Below are positions 51,362 to 57,260 of a stretch of 64,000 bases of DNA, one piece after another (position 1 is the first letter of the stretch; each line of letters opens with the position of its first letter). The DNA is taken from positions 124,001 to 188,000 of IMG/VR virus record IMGVR_UViG_3300026097_000876. One strand, written 5' to 3'. Made by a program: the position numbers and the translations under genes. The notes under the pieces were generated by a model. The model ran no database searches. It saw only the letters and a list, made by a program, of their open reading frames with translations, and had not been told where the DNA came from.

Positions 51362-53080
51362 CTATTCAGGTGCTTCGTCGGGTACTTCAGTTACTGCATC
51401 ATCTCCGCCAGCGTCGCCCGGTTCTACTGTAGGTGCTTCGTCATCCGGAGCAACATCAACACCGCTATCTAAATCAGCACTGATACCTGCTCCGCTAATA
51501 CCGGCTCCTCGCATTTCTGCGCTTGCATCAGTAGGAGAAGTAACTAAGTTTTCATCGTTTTCTTCTCTCCACATTCTTTCGTTTTCTGCAAGTTCTGCTT
51601 CTGACAATCCTAAGAATCGTTTCATTGCATATCTATTAGACATAAACGGAATTGCTTGTATCTGTGTGAAAGTACCTATTCTTTGATTATCTAGCTCGCT
51701 TTGTCTATAACTGGCAAAATTCTGCGGTGGCTGAAAAAGTAAATCAAACATTGCTACATCAATGTTTACTCCTTTTTCTATTAGATATTTTTTAAATTCT
51801 TGATTAAAAATTTCTGCAACTAAATTTTGAAGCCTTTCGCAATACTTGTTAAAACGTAATTCTTGAATATATGCTGTTCCAACACGACCGTCATTAAATT
51901 GACCTGCTCCTTCGTCTTGTGCAGCACTAGGTAAGTAAGAACTAGGAATACGTAGTCCGCGAATAAGTTTATTAGTAAAATATTTTAAATCGTCAATTTC
52001 GCCTAAGTTTGTGCCGCCTGGTAAAGTTTCAACTTTAGAACCTCTGCCTTCTGCTGTTTGGGGGAAGAAGTAGTCTTCGTTGATTGACAGAGGATTATAT
52101 GAACTGTCTATGACGTTAGTGCCTCCTCCTGTCTTGGATGGGATCCGTCTTTGATGAATTTCCGTTTTTACACGCTCCACAAACTGCATAGCAAGGTGTG
52201 AAGGCATGTTGCCCACATCAACGTAGAATACTCTTCTTTCTGGAGCTCTTTGTGTTCTATATATAATAATAGCATCTTCGAGTAATTCTTTTTGCTTGTA
52301 TACTTTAAAAATACTTTCTAATAAACTGTTACCGAAAGGTGCATTGTTATCTAGACCTTCACTTAAACTTAAATGCACAATATGTTCTGCATTAACAGCA
52401 AGTTCTTTAGTCTTATCGTGTCCGCCAAATCTTGATCCAGATTGTTGAGATGCATTTCCAACCATGCCTCGAACACCGCCTGTTAAGTATCCGTCGCCGC
52501 CTCCAGTTACATTACCATTAGTTGTATAAGGAGTAGTAGCAACCTTGTCTACAAAATTAAAGTTGATATCTTTAACAACATATTGTTCAGGCCTTTTGCC
52601 TTCGCTTTCATTTACAATAATACTTGAAACTTTTGCAGGGTCAATATGATACCATACCTTAGTTTCTGGATCGCGAATAAAAAATGCATCTCCATATTTG
52701 AATACATTTCGAACAATTCTAAACATTCTTGTACCAAAATCATTCATTTTGTGCCATTGCTGTAGGTACTGTTCTAAGATCTTAACTTCTGTATTAGTGG
52801 CACTTTGTTTAAAGTCTAAGCTAAAACTAGTTTTATTTACTGGATTTTGCTGTGTACAAAACTCAGCAAGTATATCTAAGGCAGCATTTACCTCAGAGTC
52901 CATATCCATAACATTATACTGACCGTAACGTTCAACTCTGTTTGGCGCACCTACATAGACATCAGGCAAGAAACTACTGTAGTTTGAACGTGCTGGTCCA
53001 GGTTGAGATCCAGTACTAGACAAAGGACTTTTTATTCCTGCATCTACGTCAACTGGTGTAAAATATCTTTTCCAACTCAT
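51362..53080 (-). CDS. gp20: Portal protein (gp20-like)
   Basis: EDAIIIYRTQRAPERRVFYVDVGNMP, EDYFFPQ..EGRGSKVETLPGG.NLGEIDD..YF..KL..GL.IP.S. Confidence 0.95.
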   Translation of the reverse strand: MSWKRYFTPVDVDAGIKSPLSSTGSQPGPARSNYSSFLPDVYVGAPNRVERYGQYNVMDMDSEVNAALDILAEFCTQQNPVNKTSFSLDFKQSATNTEVKILEQYLQQWHKMNDFGTRMFRIVRNVFKYGDAFFIRDPETKVWYHIDPAKVSSIIVNESEGKRPEQYVVKDINFNFVDKVATTPYTTNGNVTGGGDGYLTGGVRGMVGNASQQSGSRFGGHDKTKELAVNAEHIVHLSLSEGLDNNAPFGNSLLESIFKVYKQKELLEDAIIIYRTQRAPERRVFYVDVGNMPSHLAMQFVERVKTEIHQRRIPSKTGGGTNVIDSSYNPLSINEDYFFPQTAEGRGSKVETLPGGTNLGEIDDLKYFTNKLIRGLRIPSSYLPSAAQDEGAGQFNDGRVGTAYIQELRFNKYCERLQNLVAEIFNQEFKKYLIEKGVNIDVAMFDLLFQPPQNFASYRQSELDNQRIGTFTQIQAIPFMSNRYAMKRFLGLSEAELAENERMWREENDENLVTSPTDASAEMRGAGISGAGISADLDSGVDVAPDDEAPTVEPGDAGGDDAVTEVPDEAPE

Positions 53081-53088
53081 TTATTTTC

Positions 53089-55287
53089 CTAGCTCATTAA
53101 ATTGCCGTCTAAATTTTTAATATATCTATTAGCCGTTCTTTGCAAGTCTCTAACTTCTTGCATCGTAGTATTTAACTGTTGTAGTAAGTATTCAGGAGAA
53201 GTAACGGAATCATTTTTTGCCAGTGATGATGTTGTCGTTACACTAGTATCCATTGGTGTTGTAGGTGATTCAGCTTCAGGAGCAGCAGCAACAGCATCCT
53301 GTGCCCGAGGTGCTGAATTAGATGAAGTGCTATCCATAGACCAATCAAGACCTTTTCCTCCCATCCATTTTGGCAGATAATCTGAAAAATCTGGCATTTG
53401 TATATTGAAATCAAATAGCCCGTTCCAAATACTGCCAAACCAAGATTTAATTGAATCCCAAGCATCGCTTGCTAATTGTGCAGCACCGGGACCATACTCC
53501 TCCAAAGCATCCATGAAGTAAGATTTTATGTTTTCCCAACCAAATGTAGCAACAATTCCTGCAACGATTGTTCCGCCAATTAACCCTATAGGTCCTAAAA
53601 CTATTGCCGCTAGTCCAGCAGTGATTCCAGCAAGTACATCTGCGCTAGATAATCCGTTCCACCACTCTGTGACCCAAAGCATGGCTTTTTCCTTAAATTT
53701 AGCCCAAAGTTCAGCTCTTCCTTCTGCTGTGAATAATTTATCAAACCATTCTGTTATTTGAGGCTTGTACTCTCGCCACATTTCTACTAGGCCATTAAAA
53801 ACTTCTTTAGCCATATCGAGGCCATCAGTCTTTAACCATTCCCATGTGTCTGTTAGTGTAGGAAGAATATTAGATTTAAAATAATCTGAAACTTTTGTAT
53901 ACATTTCTCTAGACGATTCTAAATCTGGAATTAAAGTAGTAAATCCGTTTTTAAGATCCTGGAATATTTGACTGTCAAGCAACTCAGTTTGAAACATACC
54001 TCTAAGATCATTAATTGTTTCTGCTAGTGTTGTCATTGCTGCTGTGGCAGGATCTCGAGCTGCTTGTTCTTCTGCAATTGCTCCTGCGGTAGTTTCTCGT
54101 AACTTTCCTAATTCTCCAGTTAACGATACATATTCTCCTACGCTAGTACCAGCTGCAACACTTGCTTGAACACCTGCTTGTCCAAGAGAGTTTGCAAAAT
54201 CCATACCACTATCACGAACACCTACCATGAAATTATTCATTTCTTCAGCACTCATGTTTCTAATGTTTTGTGCTTGTTCTCTAAACACCTGATTATTAGA
54301 CATCAGTTGTTGGGTTAGAGGATCGTTAGCAACTCCGTCTGCCATATCTAGCAATGCTTCTTCTAATTTAGGAGATACAGCAGCTGCTTGAGATAATCTT
54401 AGACCAAATTCTTCGCCTTGCTCAGCAAGAACCATTTGTCTACGAATGTCTAAGTTCTTTTGTTTTATTTCTTCTTCTAATTGTTTTCTTGACTTTCCTG
54501 TTAACTTTGATATGCTATCAAGCTCTTTTGAGTATGCTTGAGCACCTGTTACAAGATCTTGATCGCTCATATAACGACGGCGTCCGCTGACTACCATCAT
54601 TTCATTATAACTAACTAAATTTTCGTTGAGCTCTTGTGTAGTAAAGCCCATGGCCATTAAATCTTTACCAGCTGTACTCTGTCTAAATTCTTTAGATAGC
54701 GAAGCAAAACGTTTAGCACCGTCGCCGACACTGTTACCAAAAAGACGAATACTATCACTTTGCTGTGATAATAATTCAACAAAATCTTGTTGCGGAATTG
54801 CAGCATTTCCTGCAATCCTTGTAAGTTCAAACATGTTATTAGAAAAACTAGCACCTGTTTGACTTAACTGTCTAAATTGGTCAACTTGTGTATCTAATAA
54901 TCCTGACAGTGTTGTTAATCCCGGTATAGGAAGATATTTTGCAAAGTCAGTTAATGTATTTCCGCCAGCAAGTAGTTCTACACCAAGTCCTGTTACAGCA
55001 CCAACAGTTGCGCCAATTGCAGAGGATAATGTGTTTAACAGTCCACTAGTTACATTTACAAGAGCATTACCAAACCCTTTGACTTCTTTAGTTGTATTTT
55101 TAGAAACTTTTCCAAGTAACCCAACATTTTTTACTGGGCCGCTATTATTATCTCCGCTAGGAGGTGTTGGTCCACTGCCTGTTGTACCTGTCAGAACTTT
55201 GACTAATTCTTTGAGAGTAGCTTCACTTGCTGCATTTTCTGCAAAAACTTCTCCTACTCCAGGGATATCAATTTTGACATTAGCCAT
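53089..55287 (-). CDS. Tape measure-like protein (732 aa)
   Basis: Helical A/G/Q-rich protein with Trp-spaced repeats and a hydrophobic segment near the C-terminus; divergent from the gp26-like gene. Confidence 0.65.
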   Translation of the reverse strand: MANVKIDIPGVGEVFAENAASEATLKELVKVLTGTTGSGPTPPSGDNNSGPVKNVGLLGKVSKNTTKEVKGFGNALVNVTSGLLNTLSSAIGATVGAVTGLGVELLAGGNTLTDFAKYLPIPGLTTLSGLLDTQVDQFRQLSQTGASFSNNMFELTRIAGNAAIPQQDFVELLSQQSDSIRLFGNSVGDGAKRFASLSKEFRQSTAGKDLMAMGFTTQELNENLVSYNEMMVVSGRRRYMSDQDLVTGAQAYSKELDSISKLTGKSRKQLEEEIKQKNLDIRRQMVLAEQGEEFGLRLSQAAAVSPKLEEALLDMADGVANDPLTQQLMSNNQVFREQAQNIRNMSAEEMNNFMVGVRDSGMDFANSLGQAGVQASVAAGTSVGEYVSLTGELGKLRETTAGAIAEEQAARDPATAAMTTLAETINDLRGMFQTELLDSQIFQDLKNGFTTLIPDLESSREMYTKVSDYFKSNILPTLTDTWEWLKTDGLDMAKEVFNGLVEMWREYKPQITEWFDKLFTAEGRAELWAKFKEKAMLWVTEWWNGLSSADVLAGITAGLAAIVLGPIGLIGGTIVAGIVATFGWENIKSYFMDALEEYGPGAAQLASDAWDSIKSWFGSIWNGLFDFNIQMPDFSDYLPKWMGGKGLDWSMDSTSSNSAPRAQDAVAAAPEAESPTTPMDTSVTTTSSLAKNDSVTSPEYLLQQLNTTMQEVRDLQRTANRYIKNLDGNLMS

Positions 55288-55314
55288 TAATTAAACACTC
55301 ACTTAATATGAAGC

Positions 55315-55322
55315 TATAAATA
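55315..55322 (+). promoter_or_regulatory. Late promoter, perfect TATAAATA
   Basis: 40 nt upstream of the 55362 start. Confidence 0.7.
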
Positions 55323-55340
55323 TGCTATAGCTATTAATAC

Positions 55341-55347
55341 TATTTAG
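55341..55347 (-). promoter_or_regulatory. Late promoter variant (CTAAATA) for the tape measure/portal unit
   Basis: TAAATA core on the minus strand in the 74-nt divergent gap. Confidence 0.5.
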
Positions 55348-55361
55348 CAGGAGATATAAAC

Positions 55362-56267
55362 ATGGTAGATAATAACATCCCGCCGTCAATGGGACAAACT
55401 GGAGTTCCGCTAGGACAAGTACAAGCAAATCCATTAGCAAAGCATTTAAGACAACCTAAAATTTATATTAAATTTCCTAGCGAAGGAAAATATTGGGCTA
55501 ATGGATCTTTAGAAACTACAGAAACTGGCGAGTATCCTGTATATGCTATGACAGCTAAAGATGAAATTACATTTAAAACTCCTGATGCACTGCTTAACGG
55601 GCAAGCTACTGTTGATGTGATACAAAGTTGTATTCCAAATATTAAAGACGGATGGTCAATTCCATCTATTGACATGGATGCTATTTTAATTGCAATTAGA
55701 ATGGCTAGCTTTGGTGACACTATTGATATGACTGTCAACGTGCCAAATACATCTATTCAAAAAGAATTTAAATTTAATCTCCAGCAACTATACGATCAGT
55801 ATATTAGCACTGTATTCGATGACGTTTTTAAAATTGACGGGTTTACCGTACAAATACAGCCAGTTACCTACCGTACTATGACACAGCAAAGTATTAAAGC
55901 ATTTGAAGAACAACGAGTTTTTTCAATTATTAATGACGATAATATTGACGATGCAACTAAGGTTGCTAAATTTCAAGAAAGTTTCAGGAAACTAACTGAA
56001 ATTAATATTAATACTATCATTGAAAGTGTAGTAGCTATTCAACCCGATGGTGAAGATCCTGTAACTAATAAAAAACATCTAACAGAATTTTTACAAGGGG
56101 CAGAAGCAAGGGTATACAATCAAATCAAAGATCATATCGAAGCACAAAAAGACAAATTTACACAAAAACCTGTGCAAGTTGCTTCTGAAGATGAAGAAGT
56201 TGAAGCAGGTGCTCCAAAAGTATACGATGTGCCTATTCAGTTTGATCAAAGCAATTTTTTCGGCTAA
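55362..56267 (+). CDS. gp26-like baseplate hub / tail assembly chaperone
   Basis: NPL..HLRQPKIYI.FPS.G, MTAKDEI.FK.PDALLNG, IQSCIP.I..GW.IPSID.DAILIAIR.ASFG. Confidence 0.8.
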   Translation: MVDNNIPPSMGQTGVPLGQVQANPLAKHLRQPKIYIKFPSEGKYWANGSLETTETGEYPVYAMTAKDEITFKTPDALLNGQATVDVIQSCIPNIKDGWSIPSIDMDAILIAIRMASFGDTIDMTVNVPNTSIQKEFKFNLQQLYDQYISTVFDDVFKIDGFTVQIQPVTYRTMTQQSIKAFEEQRVFSIINDDNIDDATKVAKFQESFRKLTEININTIIESVVAIQPDGEDPVTNKKHLTEFLQGAEARVYNQIKDHIEAQKDKFTQKPVQVASEDEEVEAGAPKVYDVPIQFDQSNFFG

Positions 56268-56317
56268 GGATCTTAACGTGGAACCTCGACAAAATCCTAG
56301 ACGAGGTTAAGGTCCTT
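56255..56317 (+). other. Programmed -1 ribosomal frameshift signal
   Basis: Slippery heptamer U UUU UUC (56255-61) in frame, 6-nt spacer, then stem GGAUCUU/AAGGUCC plus inner AACCUCG/CGAGGUU. Confidence 0.7.
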
Positions 56318-56491
56318 GAAGGAGAGGTTAAACAAATCAAATCTGAATTGATGAGAATTTGTTGGTGGATGAGAGGATCTATTACACTCAGCGAAGTCTA
56401 CTATCTAACTATAGAAGACAGACAACTAATTAACGATTTAATTAAAGAAAATTTAGATACAGCTAAGAAAAGCGGACAACCTTTTTGGTAA
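56261..56491 (+). CDS. -1 frame extension (76 aa, gp51-like/gpT-like) of the gp26-like gene; not in ORF track
   Basis: Open -1 frame RLRILTWNLDKILDEVKVLEGEVKQIKSELMRICWWMRGSITLSEVYYLTIEDRQLINDLIKENLDTAKKSGQPFW*. It is bounded upstream by TGA at 56243 and fills an otherwise empty 230-nt gap. Confidence 0.7.
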   Translation, partial: RLRILTWNLDKILDEVKVLEGEVKQIKSELMRICWWMRGSITLSEVYYLTIEDRQLINDLIKENLDTAKKSGQPFW

Positions 56492-56495
56492 ACTC

Positions 56496-57227
56496 TTACT
56501 TAGAAACTTTAAGTCCAGCACGTTGTATAACGTCTTTAGCTTTGTTTATTTCTCGCTCACTCGGCATCTTAACATTTCCCTTAGGTGCAGGCGTTGCAGC
56601 ATCTTTATCAGATGTTGGTGCGTCACCATAAGAACTTTTTCCTATGCGTGATCCTAGTTGCTTTTGGAATCCTTGCTGAACAAAACGTTTTATTACTTTT
56701 TTAACTTGATCATTATCTAATTTTAAATCTACTTCATTTATCATTGCTTCATTATACATGCTTTGTAGATCTAATTCGCCTTGACCTGATTTAGGAGTTA
56801 GCTTAGTTGGCTCTGGCTTTAATTTATCTTTAACAGTCTTTGCTGCACTTGCTACTTTTTTAGCACCTGTTTTAGCAGCATCCCCGGCTTTTTTTGCTGC
56901 TCCAGCTACCTTCTTAGCACCTTTAGCAATCTGTCTACCCATACTAGGATCTTGATTAATGTAAGAAAGTACAGCCTTAGGACTAGAAACAAATCCCTTA
57001 CCAGCTAAAAAATTAGCAAGTCCTTTAGCTGTCATACCTTGATTTTTTGGATCTTGCTTTGCTACTGCATAAAAGTCTTTGAATAAACTTTTTACTTCTT
57101 GATCAATTTCGACATCCAACTGAGCTGCTTTACCCATTGCCGTATTTTTTCCAAGTGTTCTTTTTAGAAATCTAACAGGACCTTCATCAACTTGTTTTGA
57201 TTCAGTTAAAATATCATAAACTTTCAT
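56496..57227 (-). CDS. Lys/Ala-rich late protein, possible internal head protein
   Basis: MKVYDILTESKQVDE N-terminus; basic; own TATAAATA promoter. Confidence 0.6.
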   Translation of the reverse strand: MKVYDILTESKQVDEGPVRFLKRTLGKNTAMGKAAQLDVEIDQEVKSLFKDFYAVAKQDPKNQGMTAKGLANFLAGKGFVSSPKAVLSYINQDPSMGRQIAKGAKKVAGAAKKAGDAAKTGAKKVASAAKTVKDKLKPEPTKLTPKSGQGELDLQSMYNEAMINEVDLKLDNDQVKKVIKRFVQQGFQKQLGSRIGKSSYGDAPTSDKDAATPAPKGNVKMPSEREINKAKDVIQRAGLKVSK

Positions 57228-57252: not shown

Positions 57253-57260
57253 TATTTATA
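57253..57260 (-). promoter_or_regulatory. Late promoter, perfect TATAAATA
   Basis: 26 nt upstream of the 57227 start. Confidence 0.7.

What the first reader, a model, noticed from the sequence alone, without database searches (positions are those of the whole stretch)
56243..56491. Unannotated -1 programmed frameshift fusing gp26-like and gp51-like domains
The gp26-like ORF ends AAU UUU UUC GGC UAA. The X XXY YYZ heptamer U UUU UUC is followed after 6 nt by a two-part hairpin (56268-56315). The -1 frame stays open for 76 codons and ends 4 nt before the convergent gene. It has no usable start near its 5' end (stop at 56243; first ATG at 56351 with no nearby RBS). Predicted products are 301 aa and about 376 aa. 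This mirrors lambda G/GT tail chaperones and sits beside the tape measure gene, whereas T4 encodes gp26 and gp51 separately.
Basis: partly seen in the sequence, partly recalled or inferred. Interest (0 to 1): 0.7.

Follow-up and report, generated by a model that had tools for sequence, protein, structure and literature searches.

The report
Frameshifted tail chaperone in jumbo phage
A giant phage makes a short and a long version of its T4 gp26-like tail-assembly protein from one gene by letting some ribosomes slip back one base; this is a known viral trick, well supported here, that goes unannotated in this phage group.

Summary
The gp26-like ORF (55362-56267, Pfam T4_baseplate) ends AAT TTT TTC GGC TAA. 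An in-phase heptamer T TTT TTC sits at 56255-56261, and a hairpin (56265-56318) follows it. The -1 frame then runs 76 codons to 56491 with no usable start.

The heptamer alone is at chance level in this AT-rich window. The comparative evidence decides the case:
- The heptamer is invariant and in phase in all 79 IMG/VR relatives whose contig reaches the site (48-100% identity). Ten isolated jumbo phages carry T TTT TTY.
- Purifying selection switches from the 0 frame to the -1 frame exactly at the heptamer, including in a stretch that has no start codon.
- The first start codon in the -1 ORF wanders from +9 to +150 nt, or is absent.
- 19 metagenomic proteins encode the same two parts in a single frame, colinear with the predicted junction NFF|RLRIL.
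- T4 has two PF12322 genes (gp26 and the longer gp51). Four complete jumbo-phage genomes have one.

It is most likely a programmed -1 ribosomal frameshift giving 301-aa and 376-aa products, analogous to lambda G/GT. It is a new member of a known kind. No expression data were available.

The parts
55315..55322 (+). TATAAATA, a match to the T4-type late promoter consensus, 40 nt upstream of the gp26-like start. Tentative.
   Evidence: The motif is not enriched in the window overall (6 found, 8.95 expected), so it rests on position only.
55362..56267 (+). gp26-like ORF in the zero frame, 301 aa. This is the short product, TAC-N-like. An AGGAG ribosome-binding site lies about 8 nt upstream.
   Evidence: Pfam PF12322 T4_baseplate E 1.7e-10, 41.4 bits. 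PHROG 150 baseplate hub E 1e-13. 5464 homologues at E <= 0.001. AF2 model pLDDT 82.9.
56243..56245 (+). TGA in the -1 frame. Together with the zero-frame TAA at 56265-56267 it confines any productive shift to a 19-nt window that holds the heptamer.
   Evidence: In relatives the -1 frame is open for only 0-63 nt upstream of the heptamer, mostly 9 nt.
56255..56261 (+). Slippery heptamer T TTT TTC (X XXY YYZ, in phase).
   Evidence: Invariant in 54 of 54 distinct relatives, while neighbouring synonymous sites vary. Present as T TTT TTY in 10 of 10 isolated jumbo phages. Family codon usage predicts AAT 56% and TTT 78%.
56261..56491 (+). -1 frame extension: 76 codons (RLRILTW...QPFW) plus TAA. It forms the C-terminal part of the predicted 376-aa long product.
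   Evidence: pN/pS is 0.42-0.46 in the -1 frame against about 0.9-1.2 in the other frames. The 78-codon length is conserved. The extension profile finds 410 proteins, some as C-termini of 319-351-aa single-frame proteins. The profile of those proteins hits 56204-56488 at E 7.8e-26.
56265..56318 (+). Two-part hairpin 3' of the heptamer, the putative frameshift stimulator. Its strong pairs begin at 56268, 6 nt after the heptamer.
   Evidence: -18.5 kcal/mol. More stable than 83 of 83 same-length windows of the upstream gene; 45 of 58 relatives have z < -1.5. Compensatory changes at 16-59 and 18-57. An alternative shorter stem occurs in other clades.
53089..55287 (-). Divergently transcribed 732-aa tape-measure-like gene. 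The T4-type portal gene lies beyond it at 51362-53080(-).
   Evidence: PHROG 58 tail length tape measure E 1.2e-10. Portal_T4 E 2.4e-109. The same synteny is found in PBECO4, Cassandra, RaK2, CBB and BF.

Best explanation
The single PF12322 (T4 gp26/gp51 family) gene of this uncultivated jumbo myophage is decoded in two ways.

Most ribosomes read 55362-56267 and terminate at the TAA, giving a 301-aa protein. A minority slip back one base on U UUU UUC (56255-56261). The two tRNA-Phe re-pair from UUU-UUC to UUU-UUU, probably while the ribosome is paused by the hairpin that starts 4-7 nt downstream. Those ribosomes continue in the -1 frame for 76 codons. The result is a 376-aa protein that shares its first 300 residues with the short form and ends in a helical extension.

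By analogy with lambda G/GT, and with T4, where the short form (gp26) and the long form (gp51) are separate paralogous genes, the two products are inferred to act together. They would be a major short chaperone and a minor long chaperone of hub and tape-measure/tail-tube initiation.

Shown here: the sequence signals, their conservation, -1-frame coding selection that begins at the heptamer, and colinearity with natural single-frame fusions.

Inferred: that the shift is ribosomal, its efficiency, and the chaperone function.
For: 1. The heptamer is in phase and invariant. All 79 IMG/VR loci whose contig reaches the site have TTTTTTC at the same place (L035's contig ends upstream of it). The adjacent Phe, Asp, Gln and Ser codons vary synonymously. 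Family codon usage would give AAT only 56% and TTT 78% of the time. Ten isolated jumbo phages carry in-phase T TTT TTY; eight have an assigned genus or family (seven genera plus the unclassified Phosso), and Munch, Xoo-sp13 and Vibrio 2.275.O are unclassified at genus level. T4 gp26, which needs no shift, spells its C-terminal FF as TTC TTT.

2. The frame of selection switches at the heptamer. Third-position entropy and pN/pS mark the 0 frame upstream (pN/pS 0.40). Downstream they mark the -1 frame (0.42-0.46, against about 0.9-1.2 for the other frames). This includes +12..+90 nt in the 25 distinct sequences, the window among them, that have no ATG, GTG or TTG there. The position after TTC G behaves as the wobble base of a -1-frame Arg codon although it is a second codon position in the 0 frame. 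So -1 decoding starts before the 0-frame stop.

3. There is no conserved start. The first start codon in the -1 ORF lies anywhere from +9 to +150 nt, and Cassandra has none. The ORF length is fixed at 78 codons in almost all metagenomic relatives and at 72-81 codons in the isolates.

4. Rosetta-stone evidence. A profile of the extension finds about 19 representative proteins of 319-351 aa whose last 77 residues match it and whose N-parts are PF12322-like. The conceptual 376-aa product aligns without a gap across the junction, FDQSNFF|RLRIL against LDxxxxF|RxKLI. The profile of those proteins hits the window genome as two colinear pieces in different frames: positions 3-241 at E 2e-52 and positions 241-335 at E 8e-26.

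5. Gene count. T4 has two PF12322 genes. Atu_ph07, PBECO4, Cassandra and RaK2 have one each in complete genomes. The window's 261.8-kb record has one.

6. A stable 3' stem-loop recurs with clade-specific sequence and some compensatory changes.

7. Literature. T4 gp26 and gp51 were proposed as tail assembly chaperones by Vladimirov et al. 2022 (Virology 566:9). That paper is not held here and is known only through PMC10274946 and PMC12846349. The latter states that poly-T slippery sequences occur in TAC-N genes of T4-like phages.
Against: - No expression data. No RNA run was listed, and there is no proteomics.
- The heptamer by itself is at chance frequency in this window.
- The window hairpin is only z = -1.5 against dinucleotide shuffles. 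No single consensus structure fits all clades. About 13 of 58 relatives show no notable structure.
- Part of the heptamer's invariance (C7 and G8) is explained by the -1-frame Arg codon rather than by slippage.
- One lineage with a separate long paralogue (L087) still keeps T TTT TTC in its short gene with the -1 frame closed, so the motif can persist without a frameshift.
- U UUU UUC is not among the most efficient E. coli heptamers (my own knowledge, not tested here).
- The predicted fold has no solved relative, so a lambda-gpG-like chaperone fold is not shown.
Confidence: 0.85

Rival explanations
1. Transcriptional slippage. RNA polymerase adds one extra U on the T6 run, so a fraction of mRNAs encode the fusion in a single frame. 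The protein outcome is the same but the mechanism differs.
For: The site is a homopolymeric T6 run, and a T7 run in Xoo-sp13. The comparative data show only that the frame changes at the run, not how it changes.
Against: Known bacterial transcriptional slippage sites usually need runs of 7-9 or more (my own knowledge). The run never lengthens beyond six in the 54 distinct metagenomic relatives. It is correctly phased as X XXY YYZ in every case. A stable hairpin follows at the spacing typical of ribosomal frameshift stimulators in most relatives.
Confidence: 0.07
2. Two separate genes. The downstream ORF is an independent small protein of about 47-75 aa, started at its own codon or by termination-reinitiation at the gp26 stop. 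GenBank records of related isolates annotate it this way.
For: In some relatives an ATG overlaps or follows the stop (ATGA in Phosso and Atu_ph07; ATG at +24 after AAGGA in L067 and L074). Small ORFs are annotated there.
Against: - In the window the first start is 31 codons into the conserved peptide and has no Shine-Dalgarno sequence.
- 25 distinct relatives have no start before +90 nt, yet that stretch is under -1-frame purifying selection.
- Cassandra has no start at all.
- The annotated starts differ from phage to phage.
- The invariant Arg codon of the -1 frame lies upstream of the 0-frame stop.
- Natural single-frame fusions join the parts at exactly that point.
Confidence: 0.05
3. An artefact or a decaying gene. 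Either an assembly indel in a homopolymer split a single 376-aa ORF, or the downstream frame is a dead remnant.
For: Homopolymer runs are classic indel-error sites. Single-frame versions of the architecture exist.
Against: The same two-frame arrangement recurs in 79 IMG/VR contigs and in 10 independently sequenced isolates. The single-frame proteins are a distinct Cys-containing paralogous lineage, only about 24% identical in the N-part. They are not repaired copies. The downstream frame is under purifying selection.
Confidence: 0.01

Closest known systems
Lambda G/GT, P2 E/E+E' and other tail assembly chaperone -1 frameshifts (Xu, Hendrix & Duda 2004, Mol Cell 16:11; cited in PMC10274946)
   Same: There is a -1 slip on an X XXY YYZ heptamer a few codons before the stop of the short ORF. 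The long product shares the whole short product and adds a C-terminal extension of about 70-80 aa. The gene lies next to the tape-measure gene. The arrangement is conserved across very divergent phages.
   Different: No sequence or fold similarity to gpG-type chaperones was found. The N-part is 300 aa, against about 130 aa in lambda. The gene is divergent from the tape-measure gene rather than directly upstream of it. The heptamer is U UUU UUC rather than G GGA AAG.
T4 gp26 and gp51 (PF12322), proposed as the T4 tail assembly chaperones by Vladimirov, Gautam & Davidson 2022, Virology 566:9 (not held; known through PMC10274946 and PMC12846349)
   Same: Same Pfam family. gp51 equals the gp26-like body plus about 48 extra C-terminal residues, which is the architecture of the predicted 376-aa product. 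The full-length profile alignment of the long forms to gp51 is colinear to the end.
   Different: T4 uses two divergently transcribed paralogous genes and no slippery site; its FF is TTC TTT. The window protein has lost the four zinc-ribbon cysteines. Homology of the extension to the gp51 tail is weak.
TAC frameshift with an invariant GTTTTT motif in Vandenendeviridae and Andersonviridae (PMC12846349), and the T7 gene 10A/10B site G GUU UUC
   Same: A poly-U, Phe-codon-based -1 slippery site near the 3' end of a structural or assembly gene. It was inferred from the same kind of comparative argument: the -1 frame is always open and the motif is invariant.
   Different: Different protein families and different phage groups. 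Here the motif is a full U6C heptamer, and the case is supported in addition by natural in-frame fusions.

Membership tests
PF12322 T4_baseplate (T4 gp26/gp51 family) | Match to the Pfam HMM above the gathering threshold | tested here: met
   41.4 bits against a cut-off of 24.5, E 1.7e-10, residues 71-260. Own-genome scan gives 41.9 bits. PHROG 150 baseplate hub E 1e-13.
PF12322 T4_baseplate (T4 gp26/gp51 family) | Two CxxC pairs (zinc ribbon), as in T4 gp26, T4 gp51 and the long natural fusions | tested here: not met
   P0001 has a single Cys. Four Cys are invariant in A4 and are present in T4 gp26 and gp51. This is a lineage difference, not a curated family criterion.
PF12322 T4_baseplate (T4 gp26/gp51 family) | Predicted fold shared with viral baseplate hub and hub-assembly proteins | tested here: met
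   The model of the long natural fusion (pLDDT 90.8) matches BFVD entries named baseplate hub assembly protein or baseplate hub subunit, with E down to 5.5e-17 and TM 0.66-0.76. The test was done on the homologue, not on the window's transframe product.
Programmed -1 ribosomal frameshift site | X XXY YYZ heptamer in the correct phase, inside the overlap of the two frames | tested here: met
   T TTT TTC at 56255-56261. Its phase was checked. It lies between the -1-frame TGA at 56243 and the 0-frame TAA at 56265.
Programmed -1 ribosomal frameshift site | Heptamer conserved beyond what the encoded protein requires | tested here: met
   54 of 54 distinct relatives and 10 of 10 isolates have T at both free wobble positions, against family usage of 56% and 78%.
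Programmed -1 ribosomal frameshift site | Downstream stimulatory RNA structure at a spacing of 5-9 nt | tested here: inconclusive
   A hairpin is present in the window and is unusually stable against same-gene windows in 45 of 58 relatives. The partner arm differs between clades, covariation is modest, and RNAalifold gives no common structure.
Programmed -1 ribosomal frameshift site | Transframe protein actually made, and made by the ribosome | not testable with these tools
   No RNA run was listed. No proteomic data were accessible.
Tail assembly chaperone pair (lambda G/GT type) | Short and long products with a common N-terminus, encoded next to the tape-measure gene | tested here: met
   Predicted products of 301 and 376 aa. 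The adjacent 732-aa ORF hits PHROG 58 tape measure. The orientation is divergent, unlike lambda.
Tail assembly chaperone pair (lambda G/GT type) | Sequence or fold relationship to characterised chaperones (gpG or HK97 type) | tested here: not met
   No Pfam chaperone family was hit. Foldseek against the PDB gave no match at E <= 0.001. VIA-align gave only generic helical hairpins with Z < 8.
Tail assembly chaperone pair (lambda G/GT type) | Binds the tape measure, recruits the tube protein, and is absent from virions | not tested
   No binding prediction or experiment was done. The function is inferred from T4 genetics and from the cited literature.

The most novel reading that the evidence does not exclude
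The frameshift may be a universal but unannotated feature of a whole supergroup of jumbo myophages: RaK2, 121Q/PBECO4, PA5oct, Atu_ph07, CBB, BF and thousands of aquatic relatives. The gp26/gp51 family would then show three interchangeable evolutionary ways to make a short and a long hub chaperone. These are one gene with a -1 frameshift, tandem short and long paralogues (L087), and divergent paralogues (T4). That would be a natural experiment on how the short:long ratio is set. If the 2022 paper did not cover jumbo phages, this would be a new and general annotation correction.
Probability: 0.4. Interest if true: 0.5.

Novelty: new member of a known kind. Interest (0 to 1): 0.42.

Why it matters
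- **Annotation.** It corrects the annotation of a core morphogenesis gene. In all ten isolated jumbo phages checked, the downstream frame is either unannotated or called a separate hypothetical protein with an arbitrary start.
- **Biology.** It extends the conserved tail-chaperone frameshift to the gp26/gp51 family outside T4. It supports, by independent comparative evidence, the idea that T4 gp26 and gp51 are the short and long members of such a pair.
- **Testability.** It offers cultivable systems (PBECO4, RaK2, PA5oct) in which a U UUU UUC site and its clade-specific hairpins can be tested.
- **Limit.** It does not reveal a new mechanism.

Tried and rejected
- **blastn of the locus against GenBank phages:** no match.
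- **Sequencing runs:** one DNA run holds the window, and no RNA run was listed. Read laying was therefore not used, and slippage in RNA could not be examined.
- **Rfam scan of 56150-56500:** only a chance snoRNA hit at E 0.94.
- **RNAalifold on 43 relatives:** no consensus structure, so I tested two explicit structures instead.
- **BLASTP and hhalign against single T4 gp26 or gp51 sequences:** uninformative. Profiles were needed.
- **Pfam PF28602:** this domain is precomputed on gp51 homologues but is absent from the local libraries. The extension could not be scored against it.
- **Foldseek PDB and VIA-align wide search of the gp26-like model:** no meaningful match.
- **Promoter and terminator scan of 55200-56700:** nothing that bears on an internal start.
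- one fold (L089) used wrong coordinates and is disregarded.
- **The 383-aa homologue P0110:** first taken as a possible natural fusion, it is an internal duplication and probably an assembly artefact.
- **The primary paper (Vladimirov et al. 2022):** it could not be read.

Full report
**1. What is in the sequence**

- The + strand ORF 55362-56267 encodes 301 aa and ends AGC AAT TTT TTC GGC TAA.
- T TTT TTC lies at 56255-56261, and its first T is a third codon position. It is therefore a correctly phased X XXY YYZ heptamer.
- The -1 frame is closed by TGA at 56243. It is then open to the TAA at 56489-56491.
- After a tandem slip the next codon is CGG at 56261, and 76 codons follow. The products are 301 aa and 376 aa, with the junction ...SNFF|RLRILTW...
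- The first canonical start codons in the -1 frame are TTG 56348 and ATG 56351. They lie 31 codons into the frame and have no Shine-Dalgarno sequence.
- The frame ends 4 nt before the convergent ORF 56496-57227(-).
- The 64 nt after the heptamer fold into a two-part hairpin. It pairs 56265-56275 with 56308-56318 and 56283-56288 with 56302-56307, at -18.5 kcal/mol.

**2. Is it more than chance?**

In this sequence alone it is not. TTTTTTC occurs 30 times in the window against 28.7 expected. The hairpin is only z = -1.5 against dinucleotide shuffles. The case rests on comparison with relatives.

**3. What the gene is**

- The 301-aa protein matches Pfam PF12322 T4_baseplate (41.4 bits, cut-off 24.5) and PHROG 150 baseplate hub.
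- Its divergent neighbour, 53089-55287(-), is tape-measure-like (PHROG 58, E 1.2e-10). A T4-type portal gene follows.
- The window lies in a 261.8-kb viral record estimated to be 73% complete.
- The homologues in isolated phages are all jumbo myophages of 286-490 kb: Atu_ph07, Phosso, PBECO4/121Q, RaK2, PA5oct/Cassandra, CBB, BF and others, at 24-30% identity. They share the same portal, tape-measure-like and gp26-like synteny.

**4. Conservation of the signal**

- Eighty IMG/VR loci at 48-100% protein identity were fetched. All 79 whose contig reaches the site carry TTTTTTC at the same position and phase. L035's contig ends before residue 276.
- Among 54 distinct sequences, positions 0-7 (TTTTTTCG) have zero entropy. 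Over the same sequences the Phe, Asp, Gln and Ser codons a few bases upstream vary synonymously: TTT 42 to TTC 12, GAT 47 to GAC 7, and CAA 38 to CAG 16.
- Across these genes Asn is AAT only 56% of the time and Phe is TTT 78% of the time. The two free wobble Ts are therefore held by something other than the protein.
- C7 and G8 are explained differently. They are the first two bases of an invariant -1-frame Arg codon. The next base is variable, behaving as that codon's wobble position although it is a second position in the 0 frame. So -1 decoding begins at the heptamer, upstream of the 0-frame stop.
- Ten isolated jumbo phages all have an in-phase T TTT TTY in the conserved [FY]DPSxFF motif. 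Nine have TTTTTTC, and Xoo-sp13 has TTTTTTT. Each has a -1 ORF of 72-81 codons that is homologous to the window's.
- T4 gp26 has its own separate long paralogue. It spells its C-terminal FF as TTC TTT.

**5. The -1 frame is coding and has no conserved start**

- Codon-position entropy peaks at 0-frame third positions upstream of the heptamer. Downstream it peaks at -1-frame third positions.
- Nei-Gojobori-type counts give pN/pS of 0.40 in the 0 frame upstream.
- Downstream they give 0.42-0.46 in the -1 frame and about 0.9-1.2 in the other two frames.
- This holds in the +12..+90 nt segment of the 25 distinct sequences, the window included, that have no ATG, GTG or TTG there.
- The first start codon in the -1 ORF sits at +9, 18, 24, 42, 51, 60, 72, 93, 96, 102, 105, 114 or 150 nt, depending on the locus. 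Cassandra has none. The ORF length is fixed at 78 codons in nearly all metagenomic relatives.
- GenBank records annotate the frame as a separate hypothetical ORF with a different start in each phage, or not at all. None has a joined CDS.

**6. Rosetta-stone evidence**

- A profile of the extension (A3) was searched against 1.84 billion representatives. It found 410 proteins at E <= 0.001.
- Most are small ORF calls with ragged N-termini. About 19 are proteins of 319-351 aa whose last 77 residues match the profile.
- These long proteins have a PF12322-like N-part and run straight into the extension in one frame.
- The conceptual 376-aa product aligns to them without a gap across the junction: FDQSNFF|RLRIL against LD....F|R.KLI. 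Identity is about 24% in the N-part and 21-43% in the C-part.
- Their profile hits the window's genome as two colinear pieces in different frames. Positions 3-241 score E 2.2e-52 and positions 241-335 score E 7.8e-26. It hits nowhere else.
- tblastn of one long form against isolated phages always stops at the junction residue.
- On one contig (L087) a Cys-less short gene is followed immediately by such a long gene. This is a two-gene solution. The short gene there still ends TCT TTT TTC but its -1 frame closes after three codons, so the motif can outlive its use.

**7. Relation to T4**

- PF12322 covers T4 gp26 residues 1-206 and gp51 residues 1-201 of 249. gp51 is therefore a gp26 paralogue with about 48 extra C-terminal residues.
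- The profile of the long natural forms aligns to a gp51 profile end to end, including that tail (prob 55%, E 1.2e-4).
- The extension alone aligns to the right place but weakly (prob 2.5%).
- T4 has two PF12322 genes. The complete genomes of Atu_ph07, PBECO4, Cassandra and RaK2 have one each.
- One gene with a shift site and two genes without one is the pattern expected if the frameshift supplies the gp51-equivalent.

**8. RNA structure**

- The 58 nt after the heptamer is more stable than every one of 83 same-length windows of the upstream gene in the window phage. It has z < -1.5 in 45 of 58 distinct relatives, with a mean z of -2.2.
- The 5' arm (A)GGAUCU starts 5-6 nt after the heptamer in most sequences. 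Its partner differs between clades.
- In the window's clade the partner is a distal arm, with an inner stem. Compensatory A-U to G-C and C-G to U-A changes occur in L048 and L062.
- In other clades the partner is a proximal arm that forms perfect 12-13-bp hairpins with different extensions.
- The more distant isolates have unrelated hairpins at the same place.
- No single consensus fits all sequences, and about a fifth lack a notable structure. I rate the stimulator as likely but not proven.

**9. Structure and function**

- The AF2 model of the window protein is confident (pLDDT 82.9). It has no solved relative.
- The long natural form models at pLDDT 90.8 with a helical C-terminal extension. 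It matches viral entries named baseplate hub or hub-assembly proteins.
- The chaperone role is therefore inferred, not shown. It rests on T4 genetics (gp26 and gp51 as hub assembly factors, PMC3004832 and PMC9024508) and on the proposal of Vladimirov et al. 2022. I could not read that paper. PMC10274946 and PMC12846349 summarise it as identifying T4-like tail chaperone genes. According to them, some use poly-T slippery sites and others use a separate short gene and long fused gene.

**10. Verdict**

The best explanation is a programmed -1 ribosomal frameshift (confidence 0.85). Transcriptional slippage on the T6 run is the main rival for mechanism. Independent initiation is largely excluded. 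An artefact is excluded.

It is a new member of a known kind. The recoding strategy and the family link are in the literature. The event is not annotated in this large phage group, and the natural fusions and the gene-count contrast with T4 give unusually clean comparative proof.

Noticed in passing
window 55315-55322 (+) and 57253-57260 (-): TATAAATA, the T4 late-promoter consensus, lies 40 nt upstream of the gp26-like start and 26 nt upstream of the start of the convergent ORF 56496-57227(-). The motif is not enriched in the window as a whole: 6 found, 8.95 expected.
   Followed up: partly
window 55362-56267 compared with alignment A4 and T4 gp26/gp51: The frameshifting lineage has lost the four invariant cysteines (two CxxC, a probable zinc ribbon). 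T4 gp26, T4 gp51 and the long single-frame relatives keep them. 'VPNT' stands where 'CPKC' would be.
   Followed up: partly
L087:820-2744: Tandem short (294 aa, Cys-less) and long (346 aa, with Cys and the C-extension) PF12322 genes, overlapping at TAATG. The short gene keeps T TTT TTC, but its -1 frame closes after three codons. This looks like a two-gene alternative to the frameshift.
   Followed up: partly
protein P0110 (383 aa, metagenomic homologue): It carries an exact internal repeat of its last ~90 residues, up to ...FDQSNFFG. This is probably an assembly artefact and not a natural fusion.
   Followed up: no
GenBank records behind L081-L084 and L089-L094: In ten isolated jumbo phages the -1 ORF is either not annotated (RaK2, Cassandra) or called a hypothetical protein with a different, often internal, start. 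None carries a joined or frameshifted CDS.
   Followed up: yes
window 56496-57227 (-): The convergent 243-aa ORF has no convincing family match. The only hits are PHROG 28557 at E 3.5e-4 and weak Pfam hits below threshold.
   Followed up: no
whole window (run X1): The only sequencing run listed as holding the window is labelled soil metagenome. Many close relatives come from Tara and other aquatic sources.
   Followed up: no
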